In this document: one piece after another, positions 9,950 to 47,698 of the stretch
How positions within the stretch are numbered: position 1 is the stretch's first letter
How the letters are laid out: each line of letters opens with the position of its first letter
Virus record (IMG/VR): IMGVR_UViG_3300048008_000449
Coordinates: 140,773-204,772 of that record
Length of the DNA stretch: 64,000 nt
Direction: 5' to 3' (one strand)
Notes under the pieces: generated by a model
Told to the model about the DNA's origin: nothing
The model's database searches: none
Seen by the model: the letters and a program-made list of their open reading frames with translations, nothing else
Program-made: the position numbers and the translations under genes

Positions 9950-10617
9950 ATAGTTGCTTGCTCCATTATTTCTTTTACCCATTTAGTATCTTGTGGGTTT
10001 ACTTTCATTGCACGTTCCCAATAATCTATTTCTAAATAATCAGTAACCATTTTAATTTGTTCAGGATTAAATCTATCAATTAATCCTTGCGCCGCATTAC
10101 TATTAAATAGTACCCATGGCGAAATCTTTCCACTACAAATATGAAATACTGCTAAATTAGGTGATACTATTTCAAAATAATTATTATATGTTGTATTGTT
10201 TTCTTTTGCCCAGTTTTGTAAAAATAGTATTGTACGTTCTACTGCCCTATCTACTGTCTCAGTTCTTAAACGTTCTTTCATCCATGATGTAAACTGTTTA
10301 TCTTTACACCAATGGTCAAGTCTTACTTGGTTTCTTACTAACCAAGTTGCGTAAGCCGGAACATCATCGATACCAATGTCGCGACAATAATAACCAAACT
10401 TACAGAAGCCAATATAGTATTGACTCTTTGCAAAATCTTCGTAGCTTTTTTCATTCTTTGAATTTGTTCCTATTTTATAAAATAATTGAAATGCTCTAAA
10501 ACCAAGTTGAACATGTTGTTCTCCTTTTTGCATAAATCTACGTTTCTGTTCACACATATGAACAGCTAGTGTACTTTCTTTTTTAAATGTTTTAGAACAG
10601 TATCCGCATTTATACAT
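9946..10617 (-). CDS. C2H2-like zinc-finger protein in the replication operon
   Basis: YKCGYCSKTFKKESTLAVHMC. Confidence 0.7.
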   Translation of the reverse strand: MYKCGYCSKTFKKESTLAVHMCEQKRRFMQKGEQHVQLGFRAFQLFYKIGTNSKNEKSYEDFAKSQYYIGFCKFGYYCRDIGIDDVPAYATWLVRNQVRLDHWCKDKQFTSWMKERLRTETVDRAVERTILFLQNWAKENNTTYNNYFEIVSPNLAVFHICSGKISPWVLFNSNAAQGLIDRFNPEQIKMVTDYLEIDYWERAMKVNPQDTKWVKEIMEQATI

Positions 10618-11278
10618 TAACAGTTTCCTTTTTCCAGAAAGGATCAGTCCAATTCTCTTTTAAGTTTTCTGGTCTACTAACTTTCATAGTATATAACGAG
10701 TTATTAATCAAGTCAACATATTTTTCTGTTGGTTGTCCAGTCCATGGAGCACCTATACATAATGTGACTTTTTCTTCTGTACCTGGCTCAAGTGCATGTG
10801 GATGACTACCATCCAATACATATGTAGTATAATTTTGTGGAATATAAACTTTATTATCTTTCTTATCTATAAAATACAATTTATCAACATTACCGTTTAA
10901 CACGATTCTAAATTTATGTTGCAGTGATCCTATTTCATCAACCTTACTATCTAAATGTACATTTAATCCATAGTTTGCTGGCGTTCTTAAAATAGTAACT
11001 CTGCCAACTGGTTCCATCCATGGAAATACTTTTTCTTTTAAAAGTTTTTGTGTAAATGTCCAATTCTGTGCAGGTTTGGTATATGCAAACTCTCCATATC
11101 TTGTATTTTTGCCTTCTGCTTGTCCGCCAAGTTGACCTTCTGCATTAAATACAGGTAGCATCTTGCATCCACGAAATTCGTTATAATGCCAGTAACTATC
11201 ATCAACTGACATTACTTCATTATACATAGCTTTTCTATCTTCATCTGTTATATTTAGATCTAAAGCCGTAAACGTCAT
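10610..11278 (-). CDS. Cupin/2OG-Fe(II) hydroxylase-like (AspH-like)
   Basis: GRVTILRT..VHLD...LDGSHPH (HxD...H triad). Confidence 0.65.
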   Translation of the reverse strand: MTFTALDLNITDEDRKAMYNEVMSVDDSYWHYNEFRGCKMLPVFNAEGQLGGQAEGKNTRYGEFAYTKPAQNWTFTQKLLKEKVFPWMEPVGRVTILRTPANYGLNVHLDSKVDEIGSLQHKFRIVLNGNVDKLYFIDKKDNKVYIPQNYTTYVLDGSHPHALEPGTEEKVTLCIGAPWTGQPTEKYVDLINNSLYTMKVSRPENLKENWTDPFWKKETVNV

Positions 11279-11733
11279 TTTAATAATTCTTTTATTTGTT
11301 TTTTATCTAGCCCGTACTCTTCAAAAAGATCTTTCCAATCATCTTTTGTTTTAGTACTAATAAATATCTCTACTTCATCATCATTTAAATGACTATAATT
11401 TTCAACTACCCACTTTTGAATCTTATTCTTTTTCATTGCCTTACCTGGTGGTAGCCATGGATGAAATGTAGTCTTACCTAATCCAACTAATTGCATCAGT
11501 TGATACTGCAATTGTGGATGTTTACGTAATTTGTTAAAGTGTACATTAACTACTTCATTAGTCCATTCTAAATAATGTTCAGTAAACATCTTGTCTCCAC
11601 AACTACTAGTATAACGCATAAGTAGCCATAAGCCAAGTTTGTTTTTCTCTTCATCAGTTAAACTATCATACCAAGTTCTATCTTTAGTATCAATAGATCT
11701 CATCTCTTCTTTGATGTTTAGTTTATTTGACAA
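11275..11733 (-). CDS. Clamp-loader small subunit (gp62-like)
   Basis: WLLMRYTS, NEVVN, KHPQLQYQL, FHPWLPP resemble T4-like gp62; replication context. Confidence 0.6.
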   Translation of the reverse strand: MSNKLNIKEEMRSIDTKDRTWYDSLTDEEKNKLGLWLLMRYTSSCGDKMFTEHYLEWTNEVVNVHFNKLRKHPQLQYQLMQLVGLGKTTFHPWLPPGKAMKKNKIQKWVVENYSHLNDDEVEIFISTKTKDDWKDLFEEYGLDKKQIKELLK

Positions 11734-11944
11734 TTATTACTTCCCCTTCAGTTTCTATCCAAACTTTTGCACCACACGGTAATGGTTTATCTGGACTATA
11801 AACAACTTTACTATCACCTTTAATATGTACTTCATGTGCATAGTCATTGCTCTTAGATGTTTTACATGTTAACACAGGCTCTCTATCACCAGACTTAGCG
11901 TTACGTTTAATTATATGCTGATTAACGTGTATTCTAGTTTTCAT
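11723..11944 (-). CDS. Small hypothetical phage protein
   Basis: Likely start MKTRIHVNQHII at 11944; YSPDKPLPCGAKVWIET. Confidence 0.65.
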   Translation of the reverse strand: MKTRIHVNQHIIKRNAKSGDREPVLTCKTSKSNDYAHEVHIKGDSKVVYSPDKPLPCGAKVWIETEGEVIIVK

Positions 11945-11948
11945 TGTA

Positions 11949-12449
11949 CTACCAAAGCTCGCTAATGTCAAGTACCTCAGGTAACTTGTTTGATTCTTTT
12001 ACAAATAATACACAAGGTGCATTTGGTCCATCATGTAGTGGTACATTTAGTAAATGGCCGAATTTAAGTTTAGGTGCATACCATTTAACATCAGTATAAA
12101 TGTTAGTAATGCTTACATCCAAGTACTTAGGTGTAAAACCAGTTACTGGATTAAATGCAAATACACTAAAACCTCTATCATTTAAACTCATTAAACTTAA
12201 TACTTCTGGATCTCCTACTGTAGGATCGCAAATTACAACACTCCAATCTAATGGCATAGTAATTTGATATTCACCAATTTTTAATACTGCCGCTGGTGCA
12301 TAAAAACTTTCCAAGAACACTAATGGGATGAAGTAGTAATCAATAAAACCTGGATTACTGTAATCTAAAATACTGTATCTTAAATCATCTATAGTATCTG
12401 GTATGTCATCTAGTTCATACGTTTCGTTTTCAACTGTTAATATTTTCAT
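11949..12449 (-). CDS. Hypothetical protein, possible degenerate Hint (intein-like) fold
   Basis: 166 aa all-beta pattern; see findings. Confidence 0.45.
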   Translation of the reverse strand: MKILTVENETYELDDIPDTIDDLRYSILDYSNPGFIDYYFIPLVFLESFYAPAAVLKIGEYQITMPLDWSVVICDPTVGDPEVLSLMSLNDRGFSVFAFNPVTGFTPKYLDVSITNIYTDVKWYAPKLKFGHLLNVPLHDGPNAPCVLFVKESNKLPEVLDISELW

Positions 12450-12458
12450 TATTTTTCC

Positions 12459-13910
12459 TTATTGCCAATCAACTTTTTCAATGCTGAATGGATAGTTTGC
12501 TTCTTTATAAAACTTCTTACGCTCTGTTAAGTGTTTTTTGCTAAATTTTGCTGTACTGGTGATGTCCCATATTTGAACATTATCTTTATCTTCTGCTTTA
12601 CGTATTCCACGACCAATACTTTGAATGACTCTAACAAAACTCTTTCCAGGTTCTATTAGTACCAGATTAAAAATACGTGGAATGTTAATTCCTACTGCCG
12701 CAACTCCATAAGTTGCTACTACAATTTGATTAGTTCCTTCATTAATATTATCATACTGATCTTTACGATCTGTAGTTTTCATTTCTCCACTAACAAAGTT
12801 AGCTTGTGGAAGATTATCACAAATTAATCCACCTGCTTTAATCCTATCTACTAATACAAGTGTATTGCCTGATGCTGATACTTTTTCAATTAATCCACTT
12901 ACATATTGCATACGATCTTTATCTGTAGTAAGATAAGTTAATTCGCTTTGATAATTATTATACTCTGCAAATTCTTTCATTTGCACAACGTTAACATGAC
13001 ATTGACTAAGCACATCCATGCCTTGTAGTTCGCTTGCACTAAGTTTATTAGTTACATCACCTAAGCATGCTTGCAAACTAACTTTCTCATGATCTGCTTT
13101 AGGTATAGTACCTGTTAATCCCCAACGTAGTGGAATGTTTGCAAATTCTTTAGTAAGTAATTCTTTTAACACATCTGCTTTTGCTTGGTGCACCTCATCT
13201 ACTATTACACATACAACGTCTTCAGCAAAGTCTGCTAAACTTAGGTCTGATTCACCTTCTCTAAATCTTTTCTTAATACTATTCAAACTTTGCCATGTAC
13301 AAATAGTATGAGTTTTTCCTAATTCTTTTTTATCGCCAAAGTAAACACCAACGTCTAATCCTAGATTGTTATAATCATCAAATGTTTGACGTACTAAATC
13401 TTTGTTTGGTACAATAACAATTGATCTTCCATATGTTTCCACACGTTCGCTAAGTGCCGCGGTTATTAATGTTTTACCTGCACCTGTTGCAATTTCTTGT
13501 AAACAATGTGGAGTCTCTAAAAACTTATTAACAATCTCAATCTGATAATCACGCAATGTTACTGGCTCACCTGCAACCGGATGTTTTTCTGGCCATAATT
13601 TATGTTGAAATGTAGTTTTATCAACTGTTGGAAAATTAAAATCAAACTTATTTCTTAAGTCATCAATATCAATTTCATATCCATTATCCATAATAGTAGG
13701 AAGTACTCTATCAAGTAAATTAATATAAGTAACACCACCTACTGTAAAGTAACTTTGACATCCATCCCATCTACCTAATTTATATGCTGGCACATGGTAT
13801 GCATATGGTAAAAAGAACTTTAATTCTTTCTCACATTTACGGCGGGTATTAACATCAAGACCTTCTATCTTGCAGTTAACTTCATCTTTTAAAACAATTT
13901 TACATTTCAT
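12459..13910 (-). CDS. uvsW: SF2 DNA helicase UvsW-like
   Basis: LRDYQ, ATGAGKT, DEVH, GLTGT, QSIGRGIR; start reassigned to ATG 13910 (MKCKIVL) from promoter geometry. Confidence 0.92.
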   Translation of the reverse strand: MKCKIVLKDEVNCKIEGLDVNTRRKCEKELKFFLPYAYHVPAYKLGRWDGCQSYFTVGGVTYINLLDRVLPTIMDNGYEIDIDDLRNKFDFNFPTVDKTTFQHKLWPEKHPVAGEPVTLRDYQIEIVNKFLETPHCLQEIATGAGKTLITAALSERVETYGRSIVIVPNKDLVRQTFDDYNNLGLDVGVYFGDKKELGKTHTICTWQSLNSIKKRFREGESDLSLADFAEDVVCVIVDEVHQAKADVLKELLTKEFANIPLRWGLTGTIPKADHEKVSLQACLGDVTNKLSASELQGMDVLSQCHVNVVQMKEFAEYNNYQSELTYLTTDKDRMQYVSGLIEKVSASGNTLVLVDRIKAGGLICDNLPQANFVSGEMKTTDRKDQYDNINEGTNQIVVATYGVAAVGINIPRIFNLVLIEPGKSFVRVIQSIGRGIRKAEDKDNVQIWDITSTAKFSKKHLTERKKFYKEANYPFSIEKVDWQ

Positions 13911-13916
13911 ACTAGT

Positions 13917-13945
13917 ATAATACATTAACTTAGACAAAAAGTCAA
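13917..13945 (-). promoter_or_regulatory. Sigma70-type promoter of a leaderless uvsW
   Basis: TTGACT-17-TATTAT-6 nt-ATG. Confidence 0.7.
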
Positions 13946-13955
13946 GTTAAAGCCT

Positions 13956-14288: not shown

Positions 14289-14305
14289 AATATTATTTAT
14301 GTCAT

Positions 14306-14329
14306 AAAAAAAGCCCCGAAGGGCTTTTT
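14306..14329. terminator. Intrinsic terminator, bidirectional shape
   Basis: AAAAAAAGCCC-CGAA-GGGCTTTTT. Confidence 0.8.
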
Positions 14330-14342
14330 CTAAAATTTATTT

Positions 14343-15209: not shown

Positions 15210-15230
15210 TTATAACTCCTGTTTTTTATT

Positions 15231-15703: not shown

Positions 15704-15717
15704 CCTTTAAAAAACCC

Positions 15718-27645: not shown

Positions 27646-28311
27646 TTAGTTACGGCTACAATCAACACCTTTACGGTCGCCCGCTGGGTGTGAGTATGGT
27701 AGCACATCAAGTAACCATTTTACTGTTTCTTCACGCTTGTCGTCATCGAGACTTAGTGCCGCACTTAAATGATATACTCCGTCAACAAAAGAAAATCCAT
27801 AATGAACTTTTCTTGTGTTAATTGCGTACCATCTACGTGCTTCTGGTTTAAAAATTTTACCATCTACAACAAAATGAAATTCTGCTGAGTTAGTGTGGTT
27901 TAAGTGACAAATCATTCTAAATGAATCACCTGTGATTCCGTCTGGAGTAACTTGTCTCCATTTATCTCTGTGAGGAGCTAAGAAATCACCTTTATCGTAT
28001 ATTAATGAACCCAATGATTCAGTGTGTTCTGGTATGTTCCATGATTCTGGAATTACATTATATTCGTATCCTGCTTTAGGACCGTTATAATCATCGTTCA
28101 CACGTGAACGTAGGATTTTTGATGGATCAGCATTTAGTGTGTCAATTTGTTCAATTGCATTATCTGGCACCCATGCATCTAGTTCGATGATGTCGCCTGC
28201 TGCGCCAAAAAGAAAATTAGTATCAAATTTCATGCTAGTAGTTACTTCAGGGTTAAATCTGTGTTCACTCATGTTAGTAGCAATGATTTTAGCTTGTTCT
28301 AGTTTTACCAT
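27646..28311 (-). CDS. Cupin/2OG-Fe(II) hydroxylase-like (AspH-like)
   Basis: PHRD...WYAINTRKVH. Confidence 0.7.
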   Translation of the reverse strand: MVKLEQAKIIATNMSEHRFNPEVTTSMKFDTNFLFGAAGDIIELDAWVPDNAIEQIDTLNADPSKILRSRVNDDYNGPKAGYEYNVIPESWNIPEHTESLGSLIYDKGDFLAPHRDKWRQVTPDGITGDSFRMICHLNHTNSAEFHFVVDGKIFKPEARRWYAINTRKVHYGFSFVDGVYHLSAALSLDDDKREETVKWLLDVLPYSHPAGDRKGVDCSRN

Positions 28312-28401
28312 GGTGTTATCCTTTTTTATATAAATTATAGCTCATTAGCTGAACTATGTGCATTGCAATGTGCAACTGTATTTATCAGTTAATGTTAAAT
28401 T

Positions 28402-28431
28402 AAAAAAGGCTACTATATCTCTATAGTAGCC
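28402..28431 (-). terminator. Intrinsic terminator after the sheath gene
   Basis: GGCTACTATA/TATAGTAGCC plus U6. Confidence 0.8.
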
Positions 28432-28460
28432 CTTAATATTATTAGTTATGTATTAACGTC

Positions 28461-30972: not shown

Positions 30973-31755
30973 TTAGCCTTTAATTTCAGCTAAAAGCTGA
31001 TCAAAACTTTCACATAGAATGTTTTCAAAATTATCACCCCAATGACCGTGAATAATCATATGAATTCTGTTTTCTGTACCAGTATTATGAACAGAATGCA
31101 ATCTACCTATATCGATTGCTCTAGCATCACCTGGTTCCCAAGGTACCATTCCTGCATCTTGCATGCAAAACTTTACTCCTGGTGGATTACTAAGTGCTAC
31201 GTTAAAGGCTGCTAAGTGTCTTTCTTTATAATCTAGATGTGGACTAATAAATCCACCCGGTTCTAGTAACATAAATCTAACTCTTTGATATTTTTTAAAA
31301 GGCCAGTGATTTTTAAGCCAATTAACTGTTACTGGGCACTTGTCTGCGATTTCTGTCCAACCAAATTCTGGTGCTTCGTCTTCTTTCCAAGCACCTTCTT
31401 CAACATAGTAATCATTGGGTTGTGTTTTATCCCATCCTTGACCATGTACAACTATACTGCTCCAACCGGGATTTATATCGCCTCGGTGTTTTACATACTC
31501 ACCTAAAAATTGCTCTGCTTCTTTTGCCATTTGGTAGTATGGTACATCTAATTGCATTTTTAATGTAGGACAATTAGCTTGTTTCATTATCCATCTAGAG
31601 TATGGTATTTTTTGTTTTTTATCTGTTTTCCAATTTAAGAATTCTTCAGGAGGTAATGCCATATTTTCATAGTGAGAAATATCGCCATTCTCTTCAAAAA
31701 ACTTTGTTACTTTTGCTAATTGTCTAATTCTTATTTCTTCTTTGTCTTGTTCCAT
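30973..31755 (-). CDS. Aspartyl/asparaginyl beta-hydroxylase-like
   Basis: RVRFMLLEPGGFISPHLD...HSVHNTGTENRIHMIIH. Confidence 0.85.
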   Translation of the reverse strand: MEQDKEEIRIRQLAKVTKFFEENGDISHYENMALPPEEFLNWKTDKKQKIPYSRWIMKQANCPTLKMQLDVPYYQMAKEAEQFLGEYVKHRGDINPGWSSIVVHGQGWDKTQPNDYYVEEGAWKEDEAPEFGWTEIADKCPVTVNWLKNHWPFKKYQRVRFMLLEPGGFISPHLDYKERHLAAFNVALSNPPGVKFCMQDAGMVPWEPGDARAIDIGRLHSVHNTGTENRIHMIIHGHWGDNFENILCESFDQLLAEIKG

Positions 31756-35308: not shown

Positions 35309-35337
35309 ATTATAGTGGGTTTTTAATTATTTGTCAA
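35309..35337 (-). promoter_or_regulatory. Sigma70-type promoter of a leaderless dNMP kinase
   Basis: TTGACA-17-TATAAT-6 nt-ATG. Confidence 0.8.
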
Positions 35338-35962
35338 TAACAAAGTTATTGTTTCTAAGTTTTTCAACTACGTCTTCAAACTTCTCACCTAATACTTTAA
35401 TTCTTAGGTAAATTCTTTCTCTTTTAATAGTAGGTACACCGTGTACAGTCATTCCATTAAATAATGTAGGGTGCTTATTGCTATAGTAGTGATTATATTC
35501 AATATCTAAATCATTCCATCCATATTTCTTTTCATAGTTAACATTTCTTTCTGGGGTAACTCCAACTCTACTATAAAAACTAATTGGTTCGCCTGCATCT
35601 TCTGGCATAATAGGAAACATTATTCCACACCACATGTAATGATCAGTATGAGGGTGAAAGCTATAACCTGGATCGTAATGTAATAAATCAATGTCACGTG
35701 GAGCAATAGGTTGTTTGAAGTTAAACATATTAACGTATTTTTCTATTACTGGATAATCAAGTAAGTTTTTGCCTTCAGTTTTTTGTACTGCAATAGCGTT
35801 CATACCTGTTCTGCCTTTGAACTCTCTCTTTTCTGGAGAAAGGTATTGCATATAATCTCCAAATTGCATTATATTATGTTTATGTTGATTTACAAAATCT
35901 AATAGTTCTAACCTATCGTATGTTACTTCGTCGATAGTACAGTGGTGATTACCAAGTTGCAT
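35327..35962 (-). CDS. Cupin/2OG-Fe(II) oxygenase-like
   Basis: PGYSFHPHTD...FNGMTVHGV...RIYLR. Confidence 0.65.
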   Translation of the reverse strand: MQLGNHHCTIDEVTYDRLELLDFVNQHKHNIMQFGDYMQYLSPEKREFKGRTGMNAIAVQKTEGKNLLDYPVIEKYVNMFNFKQPIAPRDIDLLHYDPGYSFHPHTDHYMWCGIMFPIMPEDAGEPISFYSRVGVTPERNVNYEKKYGWNDLDIEYNHYYSNKHPTLFNGMTVHGVPTIKRERIYLRIKVLGEKFEDVVEKLRNNNFVIDK

Positions 35963-39411: not shown

Positions 39412-40617
39412 TTATTTTGATTTATAGTGAATTAATTTGTCATAATATAGTGCTAAAGTAGCCCATATTGCGTCTGGGTACAAGTTAGTATATTTGTTTC
39501 CCATTTTATGATAATTTTCCCATACTGTTTTACTTACATCAAACTTACTGTAATATTTCCAAAAATCAGTATCTGTTCTATCACTTAACATGTAATGATG
39601 TTTTATATATGTACTATTATCATTCCAAACATTACGCATTGCTCTATTGTAAGTTTTAGCCCCATATCCACGTTTTAAGCACCGTACAAGCGTTGTTATA
39701 CTGAATTGCGTCATAAACAGTGCATTACTTTCTAAAGGGTCTATAAAGCCGTTACTGAGCCCTACTGCAACTACATTATTGTGCCAGGGATTAGCTAAGA
39801 CACTAGGATTCCATTTTAACAGTCTAGGTGTTTTTCCCATAAAGGGAGTTCTGTGTGCATTTACTTTATTAAACTCTGCAAGTGCATCTTCGTCAGTTTG
39901 ATGTTTGCTACTAAACACATATCCTGTTCCAATTCTATTTGTTAAATCAATTATAAATTGCCAACCATTACTACGTGCTACGCTTTGAGTGTATCCTTGT
40001 ACATCATTATCTTGCAATTCAAAAGGACAAACCCATGCTCTATCTACTAAATGATTTTCTAATTGTACTTCAGTATTGTCTTTTACAAATTTTCTACGAA
40101 ACCCTGTGCAGTCTATATATAAATCATATCCCTCTGGTAACTCGTCTAATGTGTCTATAATGTGAGTTACATTTTTACAATTATTTTTAACTATGTCTCC
40201 GGCTTTTTCAGCATCTAAGTGATATGCAGTTGCTTGCCAGCCACCTTTGTGATATAGTTGATCATTAATGTTATGCTTATCAACAATACCACTATCGTAT
40301 TGTTGTTTCCATTTATCAAAAACATTATTATCATTAAACCAAAAGGTGAATGCAAACGGATCGCCATTTGGCTTATTCCATTGACTCTTTATGTTTCCAA
40401 ATTTCTTTTGTGCATTACTTTTTTCCATCCATTCGTCTTCTGACATTCCCATGTCTTCAAAGAATTGTGCAATCTGTGGTAATGTACTTTCGCCTACGCC
40501 TATAATAGGAATATCACTACTTTCAATAAGTGTAATATCATAATCTGGAAATTGTTTTTCTAAGTATCCTGCGGCCCACCATCCAGTAGTTCCGCCTCCA
40601 ATAATACAAATTTTCAT
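39412..40617 (-). CDS. Flavin-dependent tryptophan-halogenase-like protein
   Basis: IIGGGTTGW, IGVGESTLP, IDCTGF, RIGTGYVFS, GLSNGFIDPLES. Confidence 0.85.
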   Translation of the reverse strand: MKICIIGGGTTGWWAAGYLEKQFPDYDITLIESSDIPIIGVGESTLPQIAQFFEDMGMSEDEWMEKSNAQKKFGNIKSQWNKPNGDPFAFTFWFNDNNVFDKWKQQYDSGIVDKHNINDQLYHKGGWQATAYHLDAEKAGDIVKNNCKNVTHIIDTLDELPEGYDLYIDCTGFRRKFVKDNTEVQLENHLVDRAWVCPFELQDNDVQGYTQSVARSNGWQFIIDLTNRIGTGYVFSSKHQTDEDALAEFNKVNAHRTPFMGKTPRLLKWNPSVLANPWHNNVVAVGLSNGFIDPLESNALFMTQFSITTLVRCLKRGYGAKTYNRAMRNVWNDNSTYIKHHYMLSDRTDTDFWKYYSKFDVSKTVWENYHKMGNKYTNLYPDAIWATLALYYDKLIHYKSK

Positions 40618-41756: not shown

Positions 41757-42824
41757 ATGCCAAGATTAAGTTTATATAAACCATTTAAAGGTAACGACTA
41801 TAAGTTTATGGATCACGCAATACGTGAACAATTCGATATAGGTGGTACTGGAATACACGTACACAAATACCTAGGACCGGATCCTAAGAACGATAGTAAA
41901 GATCCTAGCGAGCCTAATTATGGCAGTGGTATGGAAATAGATAATATTACAGGAGAAGAAATTAATCCTGAAGGTTTAATTGACGAAACAAACATACAAG
42001 ACTTATTGTTTATGGAAAACAGAGATCGTAAATACGATCCTGACGTATTTGAACTACGTGGTGTATATAATGTTAGTGATAATGATTTTGATTTAACACA
42101 ATTTGGTTTATTTTTAACAAATGATACATTGTTTATTAGTTTTCATATTAACGATATGGTAGAACGTTTAGGGCGTAGACTTATGCCAGGTGATGTAATT
42201 GAATTACCACATTTACGTGATGAACTTTTACTTACTAACGCTAGAGATGCTATTAATAAATTTTATGTAGTGCAAGATGCCGCTAGAGGAAGTGAAGGAT
42301 TTTCACAAACTTGGTATCCACACATTTGGCGTGTTAAAGTAGCACCATTAACAGATACACAAGAATACGCAGATATACTTGGAACTGCTAATGATCCAGA
42401 TAGTCTTAAAAATGATATAAGTGCATACAAAACAGAACTTAACATTAGTAATGCTATTGTAAAGAGTGCTGAAGCTGCTGACCCACTAGGATTACCATTA
42501 GCTGACCATTTATTTGGTGTAGAGACTGAAGATAAAACATATAAGCATGGTGAGACATTAGAACAAGGCGATCAGTTTCCAGTAAGTCCAAACGAAGGTG
42601 AGTATTTTGTAAGAACAGACTTTACACCTAATAGACTTTTTGTCAGAAGAGGCAATAAATGGCATAGATTATATGATAATGTTACTGATCAAACATGGAG
42701 TGATAGAACATATAATGCTAGTAGCTTTATTAATAACAATGCTACTACAGTTATCGACGATAAAGAGTTTCCTGAAAAGCAAGCACTTAGTCAAGTTATT
42801 AAACCAAAGAGTGATTTTGAATAA
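41757..42824 (+). CDS. Neck/head-closure protein gp14-like
   Basis: IQDLLFMENRDRKY, LTQFGLFL, MPGDVIELPH. Confidence 0.8.
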   Translation: MPRLSLYKPFKGNDYKFMDHAIREQFDIGGTGIHVHKYLGPDPKNDSKDPSEPNYGSGMEIDNITGEEINPEGLIDETNIQDLLFMENRDRKYDPDVFELRGVYNVSDNDFDLTQFGLFLTNDTLFISFHINDMVERLGRRLMPGDVIELPHLRDELLLTNARDAINKFYVVQDAARGSEGFSQTWYPHIWRVKVAPLTDTQEYADILGTANDPDSLKNDISAYKTELNISNAIVKSAEAADPLGLPLADHLFGVETEDKTYKHGETLEQGDQFPVSPNEGEYFVRTDFTPNRLFVRRGNKWHRLYDNVTDQTWSDRTYNASSFINNNATTVIDDKEFPEKQALSQVIKPKSDFE

Positions 42825-44179
42825 TGGCACAACAATATTTTTACGATAAACAAATTAGAAGATACATTCAACAGTTTATAAGACTGTTTAGTGGATTCAG
42901 TGTTGAAATGGGTAAAAACGAAGAAGACTTATCTGTATTTCAACAAGTTCCTGTACGTTATGGAGACATTAATAGAATGGCTGCACACATAACAAGAGAA
43001 AACAGTGAAAACATTATTAATACTGTTCCGTTTATAAGTTGTTACGTAACTTCATTAGATATGTTACCAGAAAGACGTACATATCAAGATCATGTTGATA
43101 AAGTTCAAGTATTTGAAAAGAAATACGATGACACAACTGGTGAATATATAAATGAAAGAGGAAATAGTTATACTGTTGAAAGACATGCACCTGTTCCTTA
43201 TATGTTACAAATGAATTGTGATATTTGGACTTCAAACACAGACCAAAAATTACAATTAATGGAACAAATACTAGTATTATTTAATCCTACACTAGACATA
43301 AGAACAAACAATAGTCCAATTGACTGGACTGCATTGAGTCATGTAGAATTAACTAATACAACATGGAGTACAAGAAGTGTGGGATCAAGCATAGATGATA
43401 TTATTGATGTTGCTACTTTAAGTTTTAATATACCAGTACATATTAATCCTCCAGCTAAAGTTAAACAGCAAAAATTAATTCATACAATTATAAGTGAACT
43501 GTATAACTTAGACGATACAAATTTAGATTTGTTTAGAGAAGAGCAATCCTTTGATAAACAAACGTTGCAATATACAATTGTAACATACGAAGATAGAAAA
43601 GTGAAATACGAAGATGGTAATTTACAATTATTAAACGCTAATGGGCAAAAACTTGATAACGATGGTTTAATACTAGACTGGTCTAAAGAGTTAAAACCTT
43701 TTGGTGAATTACGAACTGGAATAAGTCAATTAAGACTTAGAAAAAATACAGACGTAAGTGACAAATCAGATGATATAATTGGTAAACTTGATTTCCATCC
43801 TAGTGACTCAAATCTATTAACAGTTGACGTAGATCAGTCAACATTACCAACAAATACACTCACAGCCGTAAATGCTATTTTAGATCCAGTTAAAAATTAT
43901 CCTGGAGATGGAACAGTTCCAGCCGCATCATTAGGACAAAGATATATATTAATTAATGATGTACCTAGTAATCAATGGTTAAATGTTGTTGCCCACAGAT
44001 ATGATATTATTGAATATAATGGATCAACTTGGAATGTAAGTTTTGATTCTTCTACAAATACAGATACTCAATATGTAACTAACGTAGCAAGCAACGACCA
44101 GTTAGAATGGAACGGTAAAGAGTGGGTTAATAGCTATGAGGGAATTTACAATGCAGGATTCTGGAGACTCTATCTTTAA
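42824..44179 (+). CDS. Tail terminator/sheath stabiliser gp15-like with a C-terminal extension
   Basis: YFYDKQIRRY, VPVRYG, PVPY, QKLQLMEQILVLFNP. Confidence 0.85.
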   Translation: MAQQYFYDKQIRRYIQQFIRLFSGFSVEMGKNEEDLSVFQQVPVRYGDINRMAAHITRENSENIINTVPFISCYVTSLDMLPERRTYQDHVDKVQVFEKKYDDTTGEYINERGNSYTVERHAPVPYMLQMNCDIWTSNTDQKLQLMEQILVLFNPTLDIRTNNSPIDWTALSHVELTNTTWSTRSVGSSIDDIIDVATLSFNIPVHINPPAKVKQQKLIHTIISELYNLDDTNLDLFREEQSFDKQTLQYTIVTYEDRKVKYEDGNLQLLNANGQKLDNDGLILDWSKELKPFGELRTGISQLRLRKNTDVSDKSDDIIGKLDFHPSDSNLLTVDVDQSTLPTNTLTAVNAILDPVKNYPGDGTVPAASLGQRYILINDVPSNQWLNVVAHRYDIIEYNGSTWNVSFDSSTNTDTQYVTNVASNDQLEWNGKEWVNSYEGIYNAGFWRLYL

Positions 44180-44228
44180 TATCGACGACCCGTGTGACGA
44201 TGTAAGTCATTGGATAGGAAAAATATGA
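44151..44228 (+). CDS. 25-aa micro-ORF MQDSGDSIFNIDDPCDDVSHWIGKI
   Basis: Translated by hand; GAGGG upstream; ATGA overlap with the Nudix start at 44225. Confidence 0.45.
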   Translation: MQDSGDSIFNIDDPCDDVSHWIGKI

Positions 44229-44659
44229 TAATAGCAAGTGGTTGTTTATTTTTAAGCACAGACACAGGAAGAATAATGCTTCAACAACGAAGCGGTGAAG
44301 TTAATCACCCACGAACATGGGGTTTCTTTGGAGGCAAGGCTGAAAAAGGTGAAAGACCAACTGAAGCACTATTGCGTGAAATAGAAGAAGAGCTTGGATT
44401 AGTTCCAGATATAAAAAAAGTTATTCCTGTTAATAAATTTACTAGTCCTAATAAGAAATTTGTTTACCATACATTTTTAGTCACAGTTGAAGAGGAGTTT
44501 ATTCCTGTTCTTAATAACGAAAGTGATGGTTATTGCTGGATTAAAATTGGCAACTGGCCTAGACCGTTGCACCCTGGTGCAAAAATACAATGTAATTCAA
44601 AACAGTTTGTTAAAAAAATAAAAACAGTATACGAACAGTTTACTACATCGCTGGATTAA
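44225..44659 (+). CDS. Nudix hydrolase
   Basis: Nudix box GGKAEKGERPTEALLREIEEELG. Confidence 0.92.
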   Translation: MIIASGCLFLSTDTGRIMLQQRSGEVNHPRTWGFFGGKAEKGERPTEALLREIEEELGLVPDIKKVIPVNKFTSPNKKFVYHTFLVTVEEEFIPVLNNESDGYCWIKIGNWPRPLHPGAKIQCNSKQFVKKIKTVYEQFTTSLD

Positions 44660-45359
44660 TAATACCCATTTCTTTTCTACTGAATATATTATTTAAAAAT
44701 GAATTAAATACTTCTTCACTATCATATTGATGAATATCACTAAAATCTGGATCAATTTCATACATTTCAGAATTTGTTCTCATGCTATGTGAGAAACCCA
44801 ATGCAGTTGCAGTTTCTTTCCAACCATAATAACGTTTTAAATTAAAATTATTTTTTATTTCATTACATTCTATAGTAATTTGTTGTAGCATTCTTTCGTC
44901 ATTTTTATACCAAGTATATATTGGATATGTAATATCCCACCCACCTACATGTTTCCACCAATTAAAGCATTCTTGTGGTGTATCATAAAAAGACCAAAAC
45001 CTTGCTTTTGGAAATAGTTGTTTTAATAATGGCAAATGATAGCTAAACCAATGACTTTTAATAATTTTAGTTCCATAATTCCAATCAGTAAATGGTGCTT
45101 TAAATTCTTGTATTATTTCTTCTTTAGTTAATGTATCTAATATATCAAACTTATGTCCTACTGGATTATCAGGACCCCAATAAGCACCTCGATGCCATCC
45201 AACAACTTGTCCGTCAACTTTTTTTCTATATACAAAGTTATTCTTATTATCAGACAAATTAATATCTTTACATATAAGACTAAGCATACGAATTGCTCCA
45301 CTCCATCTAGATCCTGGAGCTCCTGTAACTATAATTAAATCTTCACCTTGATATTCCAT
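44643..45359 (-). CDS. Sulfotransferase-like/P-loop protein
   Basis: IVTGAPGSRWS, IIKSH, LFPKA. Confidence 0.55.
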   Translation of the reverse strand: MEYQGEDLIIVTGAPGSRWSGAIRMLSLICKDINLSDNKNNFVYRKKVDGQVVGWHRGAYWGPDNPVGHKFDILDTLTKEEIIQEFKAPFTDWNYGTKIIKSHWFSYHLPLLKQLFPKARFWSFYDTPQECFNWWKHVGGWDITYPIYTWYKNDERMLQQITIECNEIKNNFNLKRYYGWKETATALGFSHSMRTNSEMYEIDPDFSDIHQYDSEEVFNSFLNNIFSRKEMGIINPAM

Positions 45360-46168
45360 TAGTTTCCTTTATTAATTTCTTTTAAAATTTTGTTTGTAAG
45401 GTATTCATGTGTCTTAGGTCCTGGGTGTGTTTGGTCTCTTCCTAAATCTATCATTTCTTCTTTACTGTACTGTATTGATTTAATGTGTGTTGGTTCATAA
45501 TCATAAAACCAATGCTTTCTTCTTTCGTTTGGTTCTAATATATAATACTGTGCATTTGGAAATGATTGTAGTAACGCTAGTTCAAACATTTTAAATATTT
45601 TACCATTGCTTTGTTTAAAAGTTTCTCTAACAAGTTTTCTAACTTTTTCATCTTTTTCTTTTCTTAACCAAAATCGCATAAGCCAATTAGTATCATTAAC
45701 ACCCCAAAAATCAGTAAGTATAACATATTTTGGATTAAGTTTAAAATCAAATAGATTATCTGCCATATCAGTTAATGTATCAAAATCACTTATATTAAAA
45801 TGATTTAATGATAATTTTTTAGAAAGCAAATATGGTATACTCATTTCATATGGTATTCCAGTTCCTAATAATAAACTTCCGCCGGCAAATACTATACCAA
45901 CATCAGTTAAATCATCTGGACCTCTATATCCATATTTGTTCCATTTATAACTAAAGTCTAAATTAGTATCATTATCCCAATCAAGTTCTTGTATTGCATT
46001 AAAAGTAAAATGATCAGTTCCATTTTCTCCTACTTTGCATTTGTTTCCTGTATCATGCCGGCCATAATATTTTATTGTTTCATTTGGCAATCTTGGCTGT
46101 TTTTCAGCTTTTTCTTTTTGATTATAAAAGAACTTTGGATCTACCTCAGGAAAGTCGTTTTCTATCAT
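45359..46168 (-). CDS. SGNH/GDSL-like esterase or acyltransferase
   Basis: NKYGYRG, FAGGSLLLG, DLGRDQTHPG..H. Confidence 0.65.
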   Translation of the reverse strand: MIENDFPEVDPKFFYNQKEKAEKQPRLPNETIKYYGRHDTGNKCKVGENGTDHFTFNAIQELDWDNDTNLDFSYKWNKYGYRGPDDLTDVGIVFAGGSLLLGTGIPYEMSIPYLLSKKLSLNHFNISDFDTLTDMADNLFDFKLNPKYVILTDFWGVNDTNWLMRFWLRKEKDEKVRKLVRETFKQSNGKIFKMFELALLQSFPNAQYYILEPNERRKHWFYDYEPTHIKSIQYSKEEMIDLGRDQTHPGPKTHEYLTNKILKEINKGN

Positions 46169-47118
46169 ACTTTAATAACTCTATTAGGATCTGGATTATC
46201 AATCATGTGTTGTACTTTATCATTAATGAATCCAGTAAATTGGAAAGTAACTCTTGGTGTATATCCAAAGTTAGCTGTTCCATGTGGCATATTACACCAA
46301 TCGTATGTTATACATTCGCCTGCTTTATACTGATGATAATATGTATTACCAAATTGCCATACATGTCCATAATCCCAATCTTGTAGCATAACTAAAAACC
46401 TTCTTAATTTTAAAGGATTTTTATCAGCGCCAGCTTTAGTCCATACTTCACGCCATCCTGGTCTTGCATATCTCATTTGTTGATCAATATGAATAGGAGT
46501 AACTTGTCCTAGTCTTTGAATATGTAATCTGGATTGATGAACATCTACTCCTAATGCATCTATCATTCTAAGTAGTATTGCATACTCTGGTGATTCATTA
46601 CGCTTTGCGAAATAGTTTTTTCCATCTTTATCAAATCTTGCTCTAACAACCATGTCATGATACATACTACTTACGTCTTCTTTACCAGAAGCAAGTAGAA
46701 CGTCTTGTATTTCTCCGTCATGTAAATCTTTATCTTGTTTACTTAGATTACGCTGTCTATAATTTCCTATAGTCATTTCTGTTGCAGTTTTTAGTGCATG
46801 CTGTACTGCTTCACTAAAATCTCCTTCAAATCTACAAGGTACTACAAATGTTTCTTCATGTGGATCAGCAAAAGTATCAAAGTGCCAATCGGCACGTAAT
46901 TTATTATGCTCCCATCTGCTTGGAACTCCATCTACTTTAAAAATGTTATCCATTTTGTCATGTTTTTCCATCTGTTCATTACTATACATTTCATCTTTAT
47001 ATGCTGAATCAATTTGGGTATTACCTTCTTGATGTTTATGTTCTGCTTTTTTAACTGCATCTACAAGGTCATCTATTTTATCGCCACTATAATAATTTTT
47101 ATCTGTTTTTTGTTTCAT
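46165..47118 (-). CDS. Cupin/2OG-Fe(II) hydroxylase-like
   Basis: TPIHID, LQDWDYG, PHGTANFG..PR. Confidence 0.7.
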   Translation of the reverse strand: MKQKTDKNYYSGDKIDDLVDAVKKAEHKHQEGNTQIDSAYKDEMYSNEQMEKHDKMDNIFKVDGVPSRWEHNKLRADWHFDTFADPHEETFVVPCRFEGDFSEAVQHALKTATEMTIGNYRQRNLSKQDKDLHDGEIQDVLLASGKEDVSSMYHDMVVRARFDKDGKNYFAKRNESPEYAILLRMIDALGVDVHQSRLHIQRLGQVTPIHIDQQMRYARPGWREVWTKAGADKNPLKLRRFLVMLQDWDYGHVWQFGNTYYHQYKAGECITYDWCNMPHGTANFGYTPRVTFQFTGFINDKVQHMIDNPDPNRVIKV

Positions 47119-47119
47119 G

Positions 47120-47698
47120 TTAATGTTCTTTACAGTTTGGTAACATACTAATAATTGTCTTTAAGTTATTTTCAGTTAAAAACACACTCATCAATATATG
47201 ATATATGTCGTCTGACATAGCAAAGCTACCGTGTTGTTTTCTTGTATTTAATATATATGGAACACCAGGTTTAAAATCTATACGTTTGTTTTCGTATATA
47301 AAATTCCATTGACTAACATCTGTTTTATTTAATGGAATGAAAATTCTAATTTGTGGATTAAGTCTATATGCATCTCTATGCATACTAAAGAACGAACCTG
47401 CATTCATGTGTGCAGCTCTACATCTAGCTAAATTTTCCCATTTAGTAAAAAAATCAATAATTGATGGGCAATTGTGTGTATTAACATTTGGCTCTTGGTA
47501 TTCTGCATGTTTGCCTTTATGGTCAAGTGTTAAATCACCAACTGGTCCTGTTAAATTTACTCCACGTTTTCCGTTAGGTCCTTGTTCCCATTCTAATTGT
47601 TTAAGTTCGTTGATAGCTTCGTCTGAATTAAACTTATAATCTAATTCAAATATATCTCCGTAACTATTCAGTAGTGGTAGTAGATTTATATCTTTCAT
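47120..47698 (-). CDS. Aspartyl/asparaginyl beta-hydroxylase-like
   Basis: GSFFSMHRD, RIFIPL, LNTRKQHGS. Confidence 0.75.
   Translation of the reverse strand: MKDINLLPLLNSYGDIFELDYKFNSDEAINELKQLEWEQGPNGKRGVNLTGPVGDLTLDHKGKHAEYQEPNVNTHNCPSIIDFFTKWENLARCRAAHMNAGSFFSMHRDAYRLNPQIRIFIPLNKTDVSQWNFIYENKRIDFKPGVPYILNTRKQHGSFAMSDDIYHILMSVFLTENNLKTIISMLPNCKEH

What the first reader, a model, noticed from the sequence alone, without database searches (positions are those of the whole stretch)
10610..47698. Six dispersed cupin/2OG-Fe(II) hydroxylase-like genes interleaved with core genes
Seen: HxD...H proteins at 10610, 27646, 30973, 35327, 46165 and 47120, mutually divergent. They are inserted in the replication operon, between sheath and tube, upstream of sheath, behind neck gp13 and in the GT operon, and several follow late boxes. 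Known: 2OG-Fe(II) oxygenases are expanded in marine T4-like phages with mostly unknown substrates, and AspH hydroxylates Asp/Asn in proteins. Inference: a distributed post-translational modification system acting on the Asp/Asn/Thr-rich virion proteins.
Basis: partly seen in the sequence, partly recalled or inferred. Interest (0 to 1): 0.6.

Follow-up and report, generated by a model that had tools for sequence, protein, structure and literature searches.

The report
Accessory 2OG hydroxylase cassettes in marine phage
The six genes are real iron/2-oxoglutarate hydroxylases, but they are optional cassettes that come and go between core genes and travel with a viral halogenase in related phages, so a role in modifying the virion is not supported.

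Summary
All six ORFs exist at the stated coordinates, on the minus strand, and each keeps an HxD...H motif. The motif alone is weak: a loose version hits 18 of 143 ORFs in this genome. Independent evidence confirms five genes as Fe(II)/2OG oxygenases of the Asp/Asn/Pro-hydroxylase (PF05118-like) branch. These are 30973 (Pfam), 10610 and 46165 (AlphaFold plus fold search), and the paralogues 27646 and 47120 (profile hits to proline hydroxylases). 35327 is only probable. The contig holds two more copies outside the window.

The stated locations are correct. However, in 80 related marine viral contigs these positions are presence/absence polymorphic. The sheath-tube slot is filled in 16 of 67. 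Phages about 99% identical differ by clean 780-bp and 607-bp indels, each holding one such gene. In more distant relatives the same families cluster with flavin-dependent halogenases, DUF6356, radical-SAM enzymes and a methyltransferase. The 47120-type gene is often translationally coupled to the halogenase.

My best reading is accessory tailoring hydroxylases tied to a viral halogenase module, with the substrate unknown. Virion-protein hydroxylation is neither excluded nor supported. Multi-copy 2OG oxygenases in marine T4-like phages are already known; the cassette behaviour and the halogenase coupling are the new parts.

The parts
10610..11278 (-). P0001: Fe(II)/2OG oxygenase, Pfam-less family A1. 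Predicted ligands H108, D110, H161; K170 as the 2OG-binding base.
   Evidence: AF2 pLDDT 92.7. Foldseek top hits are 4p7w, 7v4f, P4H and AspH. VIA Z 12-13.6 to PHD2, ALKBH6, P4H, Cpz10 and AspH. Invariant columns in 45 homologues. hhalign to the 30973 family is 86%.
27646..28311 (-). P0002: oxygenase of family A4 and paralogue of P0006. Predicted ligands H114, D116, H170; R132 conserved.
   Evidence: BLASTP to P0006 E 6e-10. The family profile hits 4p7w at E 4.4e-6 and 1e5r at 3.8e-4. Some homologues pass PF05118. hhalign to the PF05118-type family is 95.9%.
28312..28460 (-). Leader of the P0002 cassette. It holds a terminator-like hairpin plus T-run (about 28402-28433), an ATAAATA box (28379-28385) and an RBS.
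   Evidence: Sequence read; box located. The same 780-bp unit is the only difference between L069/L070 and L071, whose flanks are 98-99.5% identical.
30973..31755 (-). P0003: Asp_Arg_Hydrox (PF05118) family oxygenase. Predicted ligands H173, D175, H220; R230.
   Evidence: Pfam E 5.8e-11, 42.9 bits against a cut-off of 22.6. PDB best hit is Cpz10, 7v4f, E 1e-3. A paralogue lies at G000:C1 12323-13096.
35327..35962 (-). P0004: probable oxygenase, Pfam-less family A3/A6. H105, D107, H174 and R183 are invariant.
   Evidence: Invariant columns hold down to 29% identity. hhalign to A4 is 55%, E 1.2e-4, with motifs in register. A4 HMM E 1.7e-3. The nearest named language-model clusters are PF05118 and PF13640. 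There is no Pfam or PDB hit and it was not folded.
46165..47118 (-). P0005: oxygenase with an N-terminal extension of about 85 residues, Pfam-less family A2. Predicted ligands H210, D212, H279; R289 and T291.
   Evidence: AF2 pLDDT 95.4. VIA Z 10-11.3 to proline 3-hydroxylase, PHD2, cis-P4H and AspH over residues about 87-300. Best viral matches are annotated Asp/Asn/Pro hydroxylases. Invariant columns.
47120..47698 (-). P0006: oxygenase of family A4. Predicted ligands H107, D109, H156; R118. This is the type that is coupled to halogenases in other phages.
   Evidence: Homologues overlap the start of a halogenase gene in several unrelated contexts.
47664..47948 (-). DUF6356 small His-rich protein. 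It lies directly upstream of the A4-type oxygenase and overlaps it in all 11 P0006-relative and halogenase loci whose coordinates I inspected.
   Evidence: PF19883 E 2.5e-8. Adjacency seen. Conserved His pattern across 24 sequences.
39412..40617 (-). Short (401 aa) flavin-dependent halogenase-like gene. It is the recurrent partner of these oxygenase families in related phages.
   Evidence: PF04820 E 1.1e-72. PDB RebH 2e-44 and VirX1 2e-38. Has its own ATAAATA box 20 nt upstream. Neighbourhood census.
44643..46168 (-). Two unknown genes (44643-45359 and 45359-46168) that travel with P0005 and the halogenase in relatives.
   Evidence: Homologues lie next to P0005-like genes and halogenases in L056 and L158. 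No family hit.
47952..49692 (-). Two upstream genes of the same operon. 47952-49076 has a DxD motif and a weak GT lead. 49042-49692 is weakly glycosyltransferase-like.
   Evidence: PHROG glycosyltransferase families at E 8e-5 and 4e-4, and Anp1 at 8e-6, below cut-off. Atlas lead Glycos_transf_2 at 0.86. DxD motif read.

Best explanation
What they are:
- The six genes encode small, soluble, single-domain Fe(II)/2-oxoglutarate-dependent hydroxylases. They fall into five families, with 27646 and 47120 as paralogues.
- All sit in or near the Asp/Asn/Pro-hydroxylase (PF05118-like) branch.
- Each should bind Fe(II) through its HxD...H triad. 2OG should be held by a conserved Arg or Lys: 9-10 residues after the distal His in four of them, and on the strand after HxD in the A4 pair.
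- Each should insert one oxygen atom into a C-H bond while 2OG is split to succinate and CO2. This chemistry is inferred from the family.

How they are carried:
- They are not fixed parts of the replication or tail modules. They are accessory cassettes sitting in the junctions between core genes of an uncultured marine T4-like large myophage. The record is 205 kb and is rated 56% complete.
- The 27646 cassette carries its own terminator hairpin, ATAAATA box and RBS, like a moron.

What they work with:
- The same families in related phages lie in islands with flavin-dependent halogenases, DUF6356, a methyltransferase, an adenylating-enzyme fragment and radical-SAM enzymes.
- The 47120-type gene forms an overlapping DUF6356-oxygenase-halogenase operon.
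- I therefore read the six genes as the scattered members of one accessory tailoring-enzyme set that works with the phage halogenase (39412-40617).
- The likely substrate is an amino acid, another small metabolite or a peptide during infection, rather than a step in virion maturation.

Shown: gene reality, fold and family, conserved ligands, cassette polymorphism, and halogenase linkage. Inferred: the chemistry, the expression timing and the class of substrate.
For: Fold and family:
-.
- Invariant ligands.
- No hydrophobic segment in any of the six (maximum KD19 1.16).

Accessory nature:
- Slot census: 16 of 67 and 20 of 43 filled. The adaptor-sheath interval ranges from 110 bp to 3.3 kb.
- The only large indels between near-identical relatives are a 780-bp A4 cassette and a 607-bp A3 cassette.
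- The same slot holds alleles of 34-40% identity in phages whose sheath is 79% identical (L085).

Linkage to halogenase:
- L056 reads DUF6356-P6-halogenase-P5-o45359-o44643. L057 reads DUF6356-P6-two P2-like genes-halogenase-like.
- L158 holds two A2, one A4 and one A3 gene together with two halogenases, DUF6356, a methyltransferase, an AMP-binding gene and two radical-SAM genes, all within 17 kb.
- Of 34 halogenase clusters, 8 have one of these oxygenases overlapping or abutting the halogenase start (gaps -61 to -3 bp), and 20 have one within 8 kb.

Other points:
- A P0001 homologue sits between AdoMet decarboxylase and a fatty-acid-hydroxylase-family gene, not in a replication block.
- The nearest solved sequence relatives act on free proline or a small intermediate.
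Against: - No substrate is identified and nothing was assayed.
- Gene neighbourhood is indirect evidence. Part of the co-occurrence may only reflect a shared hypervariable island.
- In this window the halogenase is 5.5 kb away from 46165/47120. 27646, 30973 and 35327 lie inside the tail/neck block and are probably transcribed with structural genes from ATAAATA boxes. That fits a virion-related role equally well.
- 46165/47120 share an operon with glycosyltransferase-like genes, downstream of Thr-rich fibre genes.
- The fold matches are equally good to protein hydroxylases (PHD2, P4H, AspH) and to small-molecule hydroxylases.
- The fold of 35327 is not verified.
- The complex prediction for halogenase plus P0006 gave no answer.
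Confidence: 0.55

Rival explanations
1. One reading: the hydroxylases modify virion proteins (sheath, tube, neck, fibres). The hydroxylated residues might then be glycosylated by the neighbouring GT-like enzymes, giving an optional surface decoration.
For: - 27646, 30973 and 35327 lie inside the neck-sheath-tube block, behind ATAAATA boxes shared with structural genes.
- 46165/47120 are in one operon with GT-like genes, just downstream of Thr-rich fibre genes.
- Fold neighbours include the protein hydroxylases PHD2, P4H and AspH.
- A collagen-like GXY protein lies on the same contig.
- Hydroxylase-plus-GT pairs that modify proteins are known from established knowledge (collagen, Skp1).
Against: - The cassettes are absent from most relatives that have conserved sheath and tube genes.
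- They are gained or lost between about 99% identical genomes with no change in the flanking structural genes.
- In other lineages the same families lie away from structural genes and beside halogenases.
- No EGF-like AspH site exists in the genome. The fibres are Cys-free and not Asn-rich.
- 10610 lies in a replication block.
Confidence: 0.2
2. Host-protein hydroxylation for takeover. The enzymes would hydroxylate host translation factors or ribosomal proteins, as bacterial PPHD does with EF-Tu and YcfD with L16.
For: - P. putida P4H bound to EF-Tu (4iw3) is among the top fold matches.
- An Asp/Asn hydroxylase is reported as a core pelagimyophage gene together with ribosomal protein S21 and peptide deformylase (PMC7029224).
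Against: - The fold matches do not discriminate between subfamilies.
- No neighbourhood link to translation genes was seen here.
- Presence/absence polymorphism and allele replacement fit a niche-specific accessory role better than a general takeover step.
Confidence: 0.1
3. Metabolic sink or sensor. The enzymes would mainly consume 2OG or couple to nitrogen status, as proposed for cyanophage 2OG oxygenases. A variant is modification of host lipid A or Kdo, as LpxO and KdoO (also PF05118-type) do.
For: - The Sullivan 2010 proposal (PMC3037559).
- From established knowledge, PF05118 includes lipid-modifying members.
- A P0001 homologue sits next to a fatty-acid-hydroxylase-family gene.
Against: - Five divergent families with conserved and distinct non-ligand residues argue for distinct substrates, not mere 2OG consumption.
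- None has a membrane segment, unlike LpxO.
- NtcA sites were not examined.
Confidence: 0.08
4. Nucleic-acid modification or repair, of the AlkB or TET/JBP type.
For: ALKBH5, ALKBH6 and AlkB appear among the fold matches of P0001. 10610 lies among replication genes.
Against: - The genome has no match to PF13532 (AlkB-type) or PF12851 (Tet_JBP).
- Profile links run to PF05118, not to AlkB.
- In a relative, the P0001 homologue is not in a replication context.
Confidence: 0.04

Closest known systems
Bacterial free L-proline hydroxylases (cis-4-hydroxylase 4P7W, proline 3-hydroxylase 1E5R)
   Same: They are the best solved sequence relatives of the 27646/47120 family (E 4.4e-6 and 3.8e-4, with PHRD and the distal His aligned). 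They are also top fold matches of P0001 and P0005. Like the phage proteins, they are soluble, single-domain enzymes with an HxD...H triad.
   Different: Identity is only 11-15%. The A4 family lacks the Arg that follows the distal His in 4P7W (alignment). No substrate is known for the phage proteins. They are phage-borne cassettes rather than bacterial genes.
Cpz10, the caprazamycin beta-hydroxylase (7V4F/7V4M; PMC9814697)
   Same: It is the best PDB sequence hit of P0003 (E 1e-3) and a high fold match of P0001 and P0005. It is an AspH-like small cupin that tailors a small molecule inside a biosynthetic cluster.
   Different: The similarity is weak. Cpz10's second iron site and its substrate have no demonstrated counterpart here.
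Human AspH (EGF-domain Asp/Asn beta-hydroxylase)
   Same: It belongs to the same Pfam family as P0003 (PF05118). It matches the oxygenase domain at Z 10-12.
   Different: AspH has a membrane anchor and a TPR domain, acts on Cys-rich EGF domains, and (from memory) uses only two His as metal ligands. The phage proteins have none of these extra parts and keep the Asp. The genome also has no EGF-like consensus site.
Multi-copy 2OG-Fe(II) oxygenase genes of T4-like cyanophages (PMC3037559; S-SCSM1 with 24 copies, PMC9602691)
   Same: Both are several mutually divergent 2OG oxygenase genes scattered through a marine T4-like phage genome, with functions untested.
   Different: The cyanophage genes belong to PF13640, PF13661, PF13759 and PF05721. 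This genome has no match to PF13640, PF13759 or PF05721, and its copies are PF05118-like or lack any model. The papers I read report neither cassette indels nor halogenase coupling.
Asp/Asn beta-hydroxylase genes of pelagimyophages and of P-HM1/P-HM2 (PMC7029224, PMC3037559)
   Same: They are PF05118-type genes in marine myophages, described as core to pelagimyophages.
   Different: tblastn of four of the six proteins (P0001, P0002, P0003, P0005) against 50,697 cultured-phage records found nothing, except one weak Limnohabitans-phage hit for P0003. P0004 and P0006 were not searched there. Here the genes are optional, not core.
VirX1, the flavin-dependent halogenase of cyanophage Syn10 (6QGM; reviewed in PMC8407142)
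   Same: The window's halogenase is homologous to it (E 2e-38). Both are viral halogenases.
   Different: The window's protein is about 130 residues shorter. The sources I read mention no partnership with 2OG oxygenases or DUF6356.

Membership tests
Fe(II)/2OG-dependent oxygenase superfamily | Double-stranded beta-helix (jelly-roll) fold | tested here: met
   P0001 and P0005: AF2 models with pLDDT 92.7 and 95.4, hundreds of 2OG-oxygenase matches, Z 10-13.6. P0003: Pfam. P0002/P0006: profile hit to 4p7w and 1e5r. P0004 was not folded, has only weak profile links and is inconclusive.
Fe(II)/2OG-dependent oxygenase superfamily | Conserved HxD/E...H metal triad | tested here: met
   The three residues are invariant in every family alignment. 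They align with each other and with the PHRD...H of 4p7w in profile alignments.
Fe(II)/2OG-dependent oxygenase superfamily | Basic residue about 10 positions after the distal His that binds the 2OG C5 carboxylate | tested here: inconclusive
   Present and conserved in P0001 (K170), P0003 (R230), P0004 (R183) and P0005 (R289). Absent at that position in P0002 and P0006, which instead keep an Arg on the strand after HxD (R132 and R118). Its role is inferred only.
Fe(II)/2OG-dependent oxygenase superfamily | 2OG-dependent turnover | not testable with these tools
   Needs an enzyme assay.
Pfam PF05118 Asp_Arg_Hydrox | Score above the gathering cut-off (22.6 bits) | tested here: inconclusive
   Met by P0003 (42.9 bits) and by the paralogue outside the window (45.2 bits). 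Not met by the other five. Remote links: A4 to the P0003 family 95.9%, A1 to the P0003 family 86%. One A4 homologue passes the cut-off. P0005's best viral fold matches carry this annotation. P0004 is unlinked.
AspH-type protein Asp/Asn beta-hydroxylase | Membrane anchor and TPR substrate-binding domain | tested here: not met
   The proteins are 192-317 aa single-domain proteins with no hydrophobic segment. Pfam finds no TPR.
AspH-type protein Asp/Asn beta-hydroxylase | EGF-like substrate consensus C-x-[DN]-x4-[FY]-x-C-x-C in candidate substrates | tested here: not met
   There are 0 matches among all ORFs of 60 aa or more on the contig. The fibre proteins contain 0-0.2% Cys.
LpxO/KdoO-type lipid A hydroxylases | Integral membrane anchoring | tested here: not met
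   Maximum 19-residue Kyte-Doolittle mean is 0.46-1.16.
Cyanophage-type 2OG-Fe(II) AMGs (PF13640, PF13759, PF05721) | Match to one of these Pfam models | tested here: not met
   The 205-kb record has no match at E <= 1. PF13661 was not tested.
AlkB or TET/JBP nucleic-acid oxygenases | Match to PF13532 or PF12851 | tested here: not met
   No match in the record.
Moron-like accessory cassette | Own transcription signals, and presence/absence between otherwise near-identical genomes | tested here: met
   P0002: hairpin plus T-run, ATAAATA box and RBS within a 780-bp unit that is absent from L071, with flanks 98-99.5% identical. P0004-type: a 607-bp indel between L098 and L103/L104, with no promoter of its own seen in the window. 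Not examined for P0001, P0003 and P0005.
DUF6356-oxygenase-halogenase module (defined here) | A4-type oxygenase preceded by DUF6356 and overlapping a flavin-dependent halogenase | tested here: inconclusive
   The full overlapping triad is seen in several lineages (L188 group, L192, L198, L199, L203). In the window, DUF6356 and P0006 are adjacent, but the halogenase lies 5.5 kb downstream, beyond an oppositely oriented gp15 block.

The most novel reading that the evidence does not exclude
Marine large myophages may carry a modular tailoring pathway. Its parts would be a short flavin-dependent halogenase, DUF6356 and several PF05118-like 2OG hydroxylases. In some genomes radical-SAM enzymes, a methyltransferase and an adenylating enzyme join them, and here an SbmA/BacA-like peptide transporter lies alongside. 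The pathway would make or remodel a halogenated and hydroxylated small molecule or peptide during infection. The six 'dispersed' genes of this window would be its scattered members.
Probability: 0.3. Interest if true: 0.75.

Novelty: new variant of a known kind. Interest (0 to 1): 0.45.

Why it matters
Multi-copy 2OG oxygenases are among the most common unexplained genes of marine T4-like phages. Fifteen years after they were noticed, no substrate is known.

This locus adds three testable handles:
- Natural near-isogenic phage variants with and without a given hydroxylase cassette.
- Three families that no public model covers, two of them with confident structure models.
- A recurring, translationally coupled DUF6356-oxygenase-halogenase operon, which suggests a defined three-gene unit to express and assay together.

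If the halogenase link is functional, it would give the orphan viral halogenases of the VirX1 type a pathway context. It would also point to phage-made specialised metabolites or modified peptides in the ocean. If the enzymes instead decorate the virion, the cassette polymorphism would mark a rapidly switching surface chemistry.

Tried and rejected
- Pfam, PHROGs and NCBIfam gave nothing for five of the six proteins.
- tblastn against cultured phages found nothing for P0001, P0002 and P0005, and one weak hit for P0003.
- Profile searches of the PDB with the P0001, P0005 and P0004 families gave only chance hits.
- Scanning all 20 members of the widened P0004 family against Pfam found no oxygenase model.
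- A motif-only census was rejected as unspecific: 18 of 143 ORFs matched, some of them radical-SAM proteins.
- The canonical T4 late box TATAAATA is rarer than chance (3 copies against 11.8 expected). The shorter ATAAATA is the informative element.
- I considered DUF6356 as a Trp-rich precursor for the halogenase. I dropped this because only one Trp is conserved, while a His-rich pattern spans the whole protein.
- The PDB, PHROG and atlas searches run on the unknown neighbours 44643-45359, 45359-46168 and 47952-49076 gave no usable assignment.
- Complex prediction on halogenase plus P0006 returned 'no answer'. It counts neither for nor against binding.
I did not try to reach the same end with another tool.
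- Only table 11 was used.

Full report
**1. What is there**

The window is the last 64 kb of a 204,772-bp IMG/VR viral record that CheckV rates 56% complete. GC is about 34%.

It is a T4-like myophage only distantly related to cultured ones.
- The sheath (28461-30878) is at best 38% identical to that of Pseudomonas phage PA5oct and its relatives.
- Megablast finds nothing.
- PHROG and Pfam scans identify helicase, UvsX, UvsY, gp32-like SSB, large terminase, head-closure, two tube-like proteins, sheath, neck adaptor, dNMP kinase and gp15.

I call them P0001 to P0006 in window order.

**2. Are they 2OG oxygenases?**

A loose HxD...H...R/K pattern matches 18 of 143 ORFs of 150-400 aa on the contig. 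Several of those are radical-SAM or unrelated proteins. Independent evidence is therefore needed.

- P0003 hits Pfam PF05118 Asp_Arg_Hydrox (E 5.8e-11, 42.9 bits against a cut-off of 22.6). The other five have no hit in Pfam, PHROGs or NCBIfam.
- P0001 has 75 metagenomic homologue clusters, none annotated.
  - H108, D110, H161 and K170 are invariant.
  - Its AF2 model (pLDDT 92.7) matches hundreds of 2OG oxygenases. Top Foldseek hits are L-proline cis-4-hydroxylase 4p7w, Cpz10 7v4f, bacterial and viral prolyl hydroxylases, AspH and ALKBH6.
  - VIA Z is 12-13.6 with 146-164 residues aligned at 3-4 Å.
- P0005 has 89 homologue clusters.
  - H210, D212, H279 and R289 are invariant.
  - Its model has pLDDT 95.4.
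  - Z is 10-11.3 to proline 3-hydroxylase, PHD2, cis-P4H and AspH over residues about 87-300.
  - Its best viral matches are proteins annotated as Asp/Asn/Pro hydroxylases.
- P0002 and P0006 are paralogues (29% identity, E 6e-10).
  - An exhaustive search of 1.84 billion representatives found only 26 relatives of P0002.
  - One of ten tested relatives passes PF05118 and two hit it weakly.
  - The family profile hits 4p7w (E 4.4e-6) and 1e5r (E 3.8e-4), with PHRD and the distal His aligned.
  - With enriched alignments, the family matches the P0003 family at 95.9% hhalign probability, E 5e-9.
- P0004 is the weak case.
  - H105, D107, H174 and R183 stay invariant down to 29% identity.
  - The only homology links are an A4-HMM hit at E 1.7e-3, hhalign at 55% with the motifs in register, and language-model neighbours that carry PF05118 or PF13640.
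  - I call it probable (about 0.75).

None of the six has a membrane segment. The contig carries two more copies outside the window. One is a PF05118 gene at 12323-13096. The other is an A4-family gene at 63826-64584 (E 2.7e-28). There is no match to PF13640, PF13759, PF05721, PF13532 or PF12851.

**3. Context claims**

- The 'GT operon' is only weakly supported. 49042-49692 has sub-threshold glycosyltransferase hits. 47952-49076 has a DxD motif and a weak lead.
- ATAAATA is a genuine upstream element. 22 of 25 copies are on the coding strand, and 16 of those 22 lie in the 6.5% of the window that is intergenic, 6-94 nt before gene starts.
- P0002 has its own box 68 nt upstream, after a hairpin and T-run that follow the sheath stop.
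- P0003 has a full TATAAATA 145 nt upstream, inside the preceding ORF.
- P0004, P0005, P0006 and P0001 have none of their own.
- The box also precedes replication-block genes, so calling it 'late' is an analogy with T4, not a finding.

**4. The genes are optional cassettes**

I fetched 80 viral contigs whose sheath is 66-100% identical and mapped the neighbourhood with my family HMMs.

- The backbone is adaptor, sheath, tube.
- In the most distant relatives these genes are separated by only about 110 bp.
- The sheath-tube junction holds an A4-family gene in 16 of 67 assessable loci.
- The adaptor-sheath interval holds one of these oxygenases in 20 of 43, and it varies from 110 bp to 3.3 kb.
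- The same slot can hold very different alleles. L085 has P2-like and P4-like genes at 40% and 34% identity, while its sheath is 79% identical.
- L140 carries three tandem A4 genes upstream of the sheath.
- Among all near-identical pairs, the only large indels are a 780-bp unit and a 607-bp unit.
  - The 780-bp unit consists of hairpin, ATAAATA, RBS and the P0002 ORF. It separates L069/L070 from L071, with flanks 98-99.5% identical.
  - The 607-bp unit carries a P0004-type ORF. It separates L098 from L103/L104, with flanks 97.8-99.3% identical.

The flanking structural genes do not change with the cassette.

**5. What they travel with**

- L056: DUF6356, P0006-like, halogenase, P0005-like, then homologues of 45359-46168 and 44643-45359.
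- L057: DUF6356, P0006-like, two P0002-like genes (28% and 53% identity) and a halogenase-like gene.
- L158, a Tara scaffold, packs the following into 17 kb:
  - two P0005-family genes, one A4 gene and one P0004-family gene;
  - two halogenases and DUF6356;
  - two 44643-like genes and one 45359-like gene;
  - a methyltransferase, an AMP-binding gene and two radical-SAM genes.
- I then fetched 74 viral loci with a halogenase 25-100% identical to 39412-40617.
  - 55 of them carry at least one of these oxygenases in the flank.
  - After clustering the halogenases at 80% identity there are 34 clusters. In 8 of these an oxygenase overlaps or abuts the halogenase start (gaps -61 to -3 bp). Six of the eight are A4-type, and six have DUF6356 just upstream. 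20 clusters have an oxygenase within 8 kb.
  - In the L188 group the three overlapping genes form a self-contained unit, flanked by unrelated genes on the opposite strand.
- A P0001 homologue (52% identical, on a 304-kb contig) sits between AdoMet decarboxylase and a fatty-acid-hydroxylase-family gene, after a B12/radical-SAM gene. It is not in a replication block.
- In the window, the halogenase (RebH E 2e-44, VirX1 E 2e-38) lies next to an SbmA/BacA-like transporter (PF05992, E 2e-138). Both have their own ATAAATA box.

**6. Interpretation**

Shown:
- five certain and one probable Fe(II)/2OG oxygenase of the PF05118-like branch;
- conserved ligands;
- soluble single-domain architecture;
- cassette polymorphism;
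- recurrent operonic linkage of the A4 type, and looser linkage of the A2, A3 and P0003 types, to flavin-dependent halogenases and DUF6356.

Inferred:
- hydroxylation chemistry;
- expression with late genes;
- a substrate that is a small molecule, amino acid or peptide handled together with the halogenase.

The tail-block location, the GT-like neighbours, the Thr-rich fibres and a collagen-like protein on the contig all fit it. It has no positive support, however, and it fits poorly with three findings: the optional nature of the genes, the absence of AspH-type substrate motifs, and the neighbourhoods in other lineages. The fold matches cannot decide, because protein hydroxylases and small-molecule hydroxylases score within one Z unit of each other.

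**7. Comparison with what is known**

- Multiple divergent 2OG oxygenase genes in marine T4-like phages are well documented: 1-5 per genome, and 24 in S-SCSM1. They belong to PF13640, PF13661, PF13759 and PF05721, and their functions are untested (PMC3037559; PMC9602691).
- PF05118-type genes are reported in P-HM1/P-HM2 and as core genes of pelagimyophages.
- The present set differs in three ways. Its family make-up is different, and three families lack any public model. The genes behave demonstrably as cassettes. They are coupled to halogenase and DUF6356.
- For that coupling I found no description in the searchable library. 'DUF6356' occurs in one unrelated paper, and the VirX1 review text gives no pathway context.
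- I therefore rate this a new variant of a known kind.

**8. Limits**

- The complex prediction gave no answer.
- The co-occurrence statistics are not corrected for phylogeny.
- The host is unknown.

Noticed in passing
window 40681-41652 (-): A phage-encoded SbmA/BacA-like inner-membrane peptide transporter (PF05992, E 2e-138, full length). It lies directly upstream of the halogenase and has its own ATAAATA box 45 nt upstream. It is conserved beside the halogenase in many relatives.
   Followed up: partly
window 39412-40617 (-): A short (401 aa against about 530 aa) flavin-dependent tryptophan-halogenase-like gene, homologous to RebH, PrnA and the cyanophage enzyme VirX1. I did not check the usual WxWxIP motif or the catalytic residues.
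   Followed up: partly
window 47664-47948 (-): The DUF6356 protein (94 aa) has a His-rich pattern (HL..ET.W.Y..HL.HS ... HG ... YH.I..I.H) conserved in at least 90% of 24 aligned sequences (22 distinct homologues). It overlaps the downstream A4-type oxygenase in the 11 loci whose coordinates I inspected. It could be a small metal-binding partner.
   Followed up: partly
window 31731-33182 and 33175-34641 (-): Two tandem paralogous ORFs of 483 and 488 aa with no family assignment lie between P0003 and dNMP kinase. In relatives they are present, absent or single, so they belong to the same variable interval.
   Followed up: partly
window 52000-60000: GC rises to 0.40-0.42 over the fibre genes. 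These include a 1594-aa ORF (54906-59690) with 14.8% Thr, no Cys and 0.9% Pro. Long antisense ORFs there are probably a composition artefact. 52033-53181 ends in a Peptidase_S74 intramolecular chaperone domain.
   Followed up: no
G000:C1:131932-133452 (-), just upstream of the window: A 506-aa protein with collagen-like G-X-Y runs (GPT/GPQ/GPA triplets). It would be a conceivable substrate for a prolyl-hydroxylase-like enzyme.
   Followed up: no
G000:C1:12323-13096 (+) and 63826-64584 (-): Two further oxygenase paralogues outside the window. The first is PF05118 (45.2 bits) and close to the P0003 family. The second belongs to the A4 family (HMM E 2.7e-28).
   Followed up: partly
G000:C1:17777-18499 (+) and 79387-80301 (-): Radical-SAM genes elsewhere on the contig. 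In the relative L158, radical-SAM genes sit in the same island as the oxygenases and halogenases.
   Followed up: no
window, minus strand, 22 sites (e.g. 20848, 22427, 27260, 28379, 30930, 36727, 40637, 41697, 51951, 54789, 59784): ATAAATA boxes are strongly strand-biased and intergenic, 6-94 nt upstream of starts. The full T4 consensus TATAAATA occurs only three times, fewer than chance.
   Followed up: yes
L066 (ENA contig of 1.85 Mb): A 37%-identical homologue of P0001 lies on a 1.85-Mb contig among ankyrin-repeat, FGE-sulfatase and radical-SAM genes. This may be a giant virus or a cellular genome, so the family is not confined to phages.
   Followed up: no
window 44210-44659 (+) and 42824-44179 (+): A NUDIX hydrolase gene follows gp15 (tail sheath stabiliser) in a three-gene plus-strand block. 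This block interrupts the otherwise minus-strand accessory island between 44643 and 41652.
   Followed up: no
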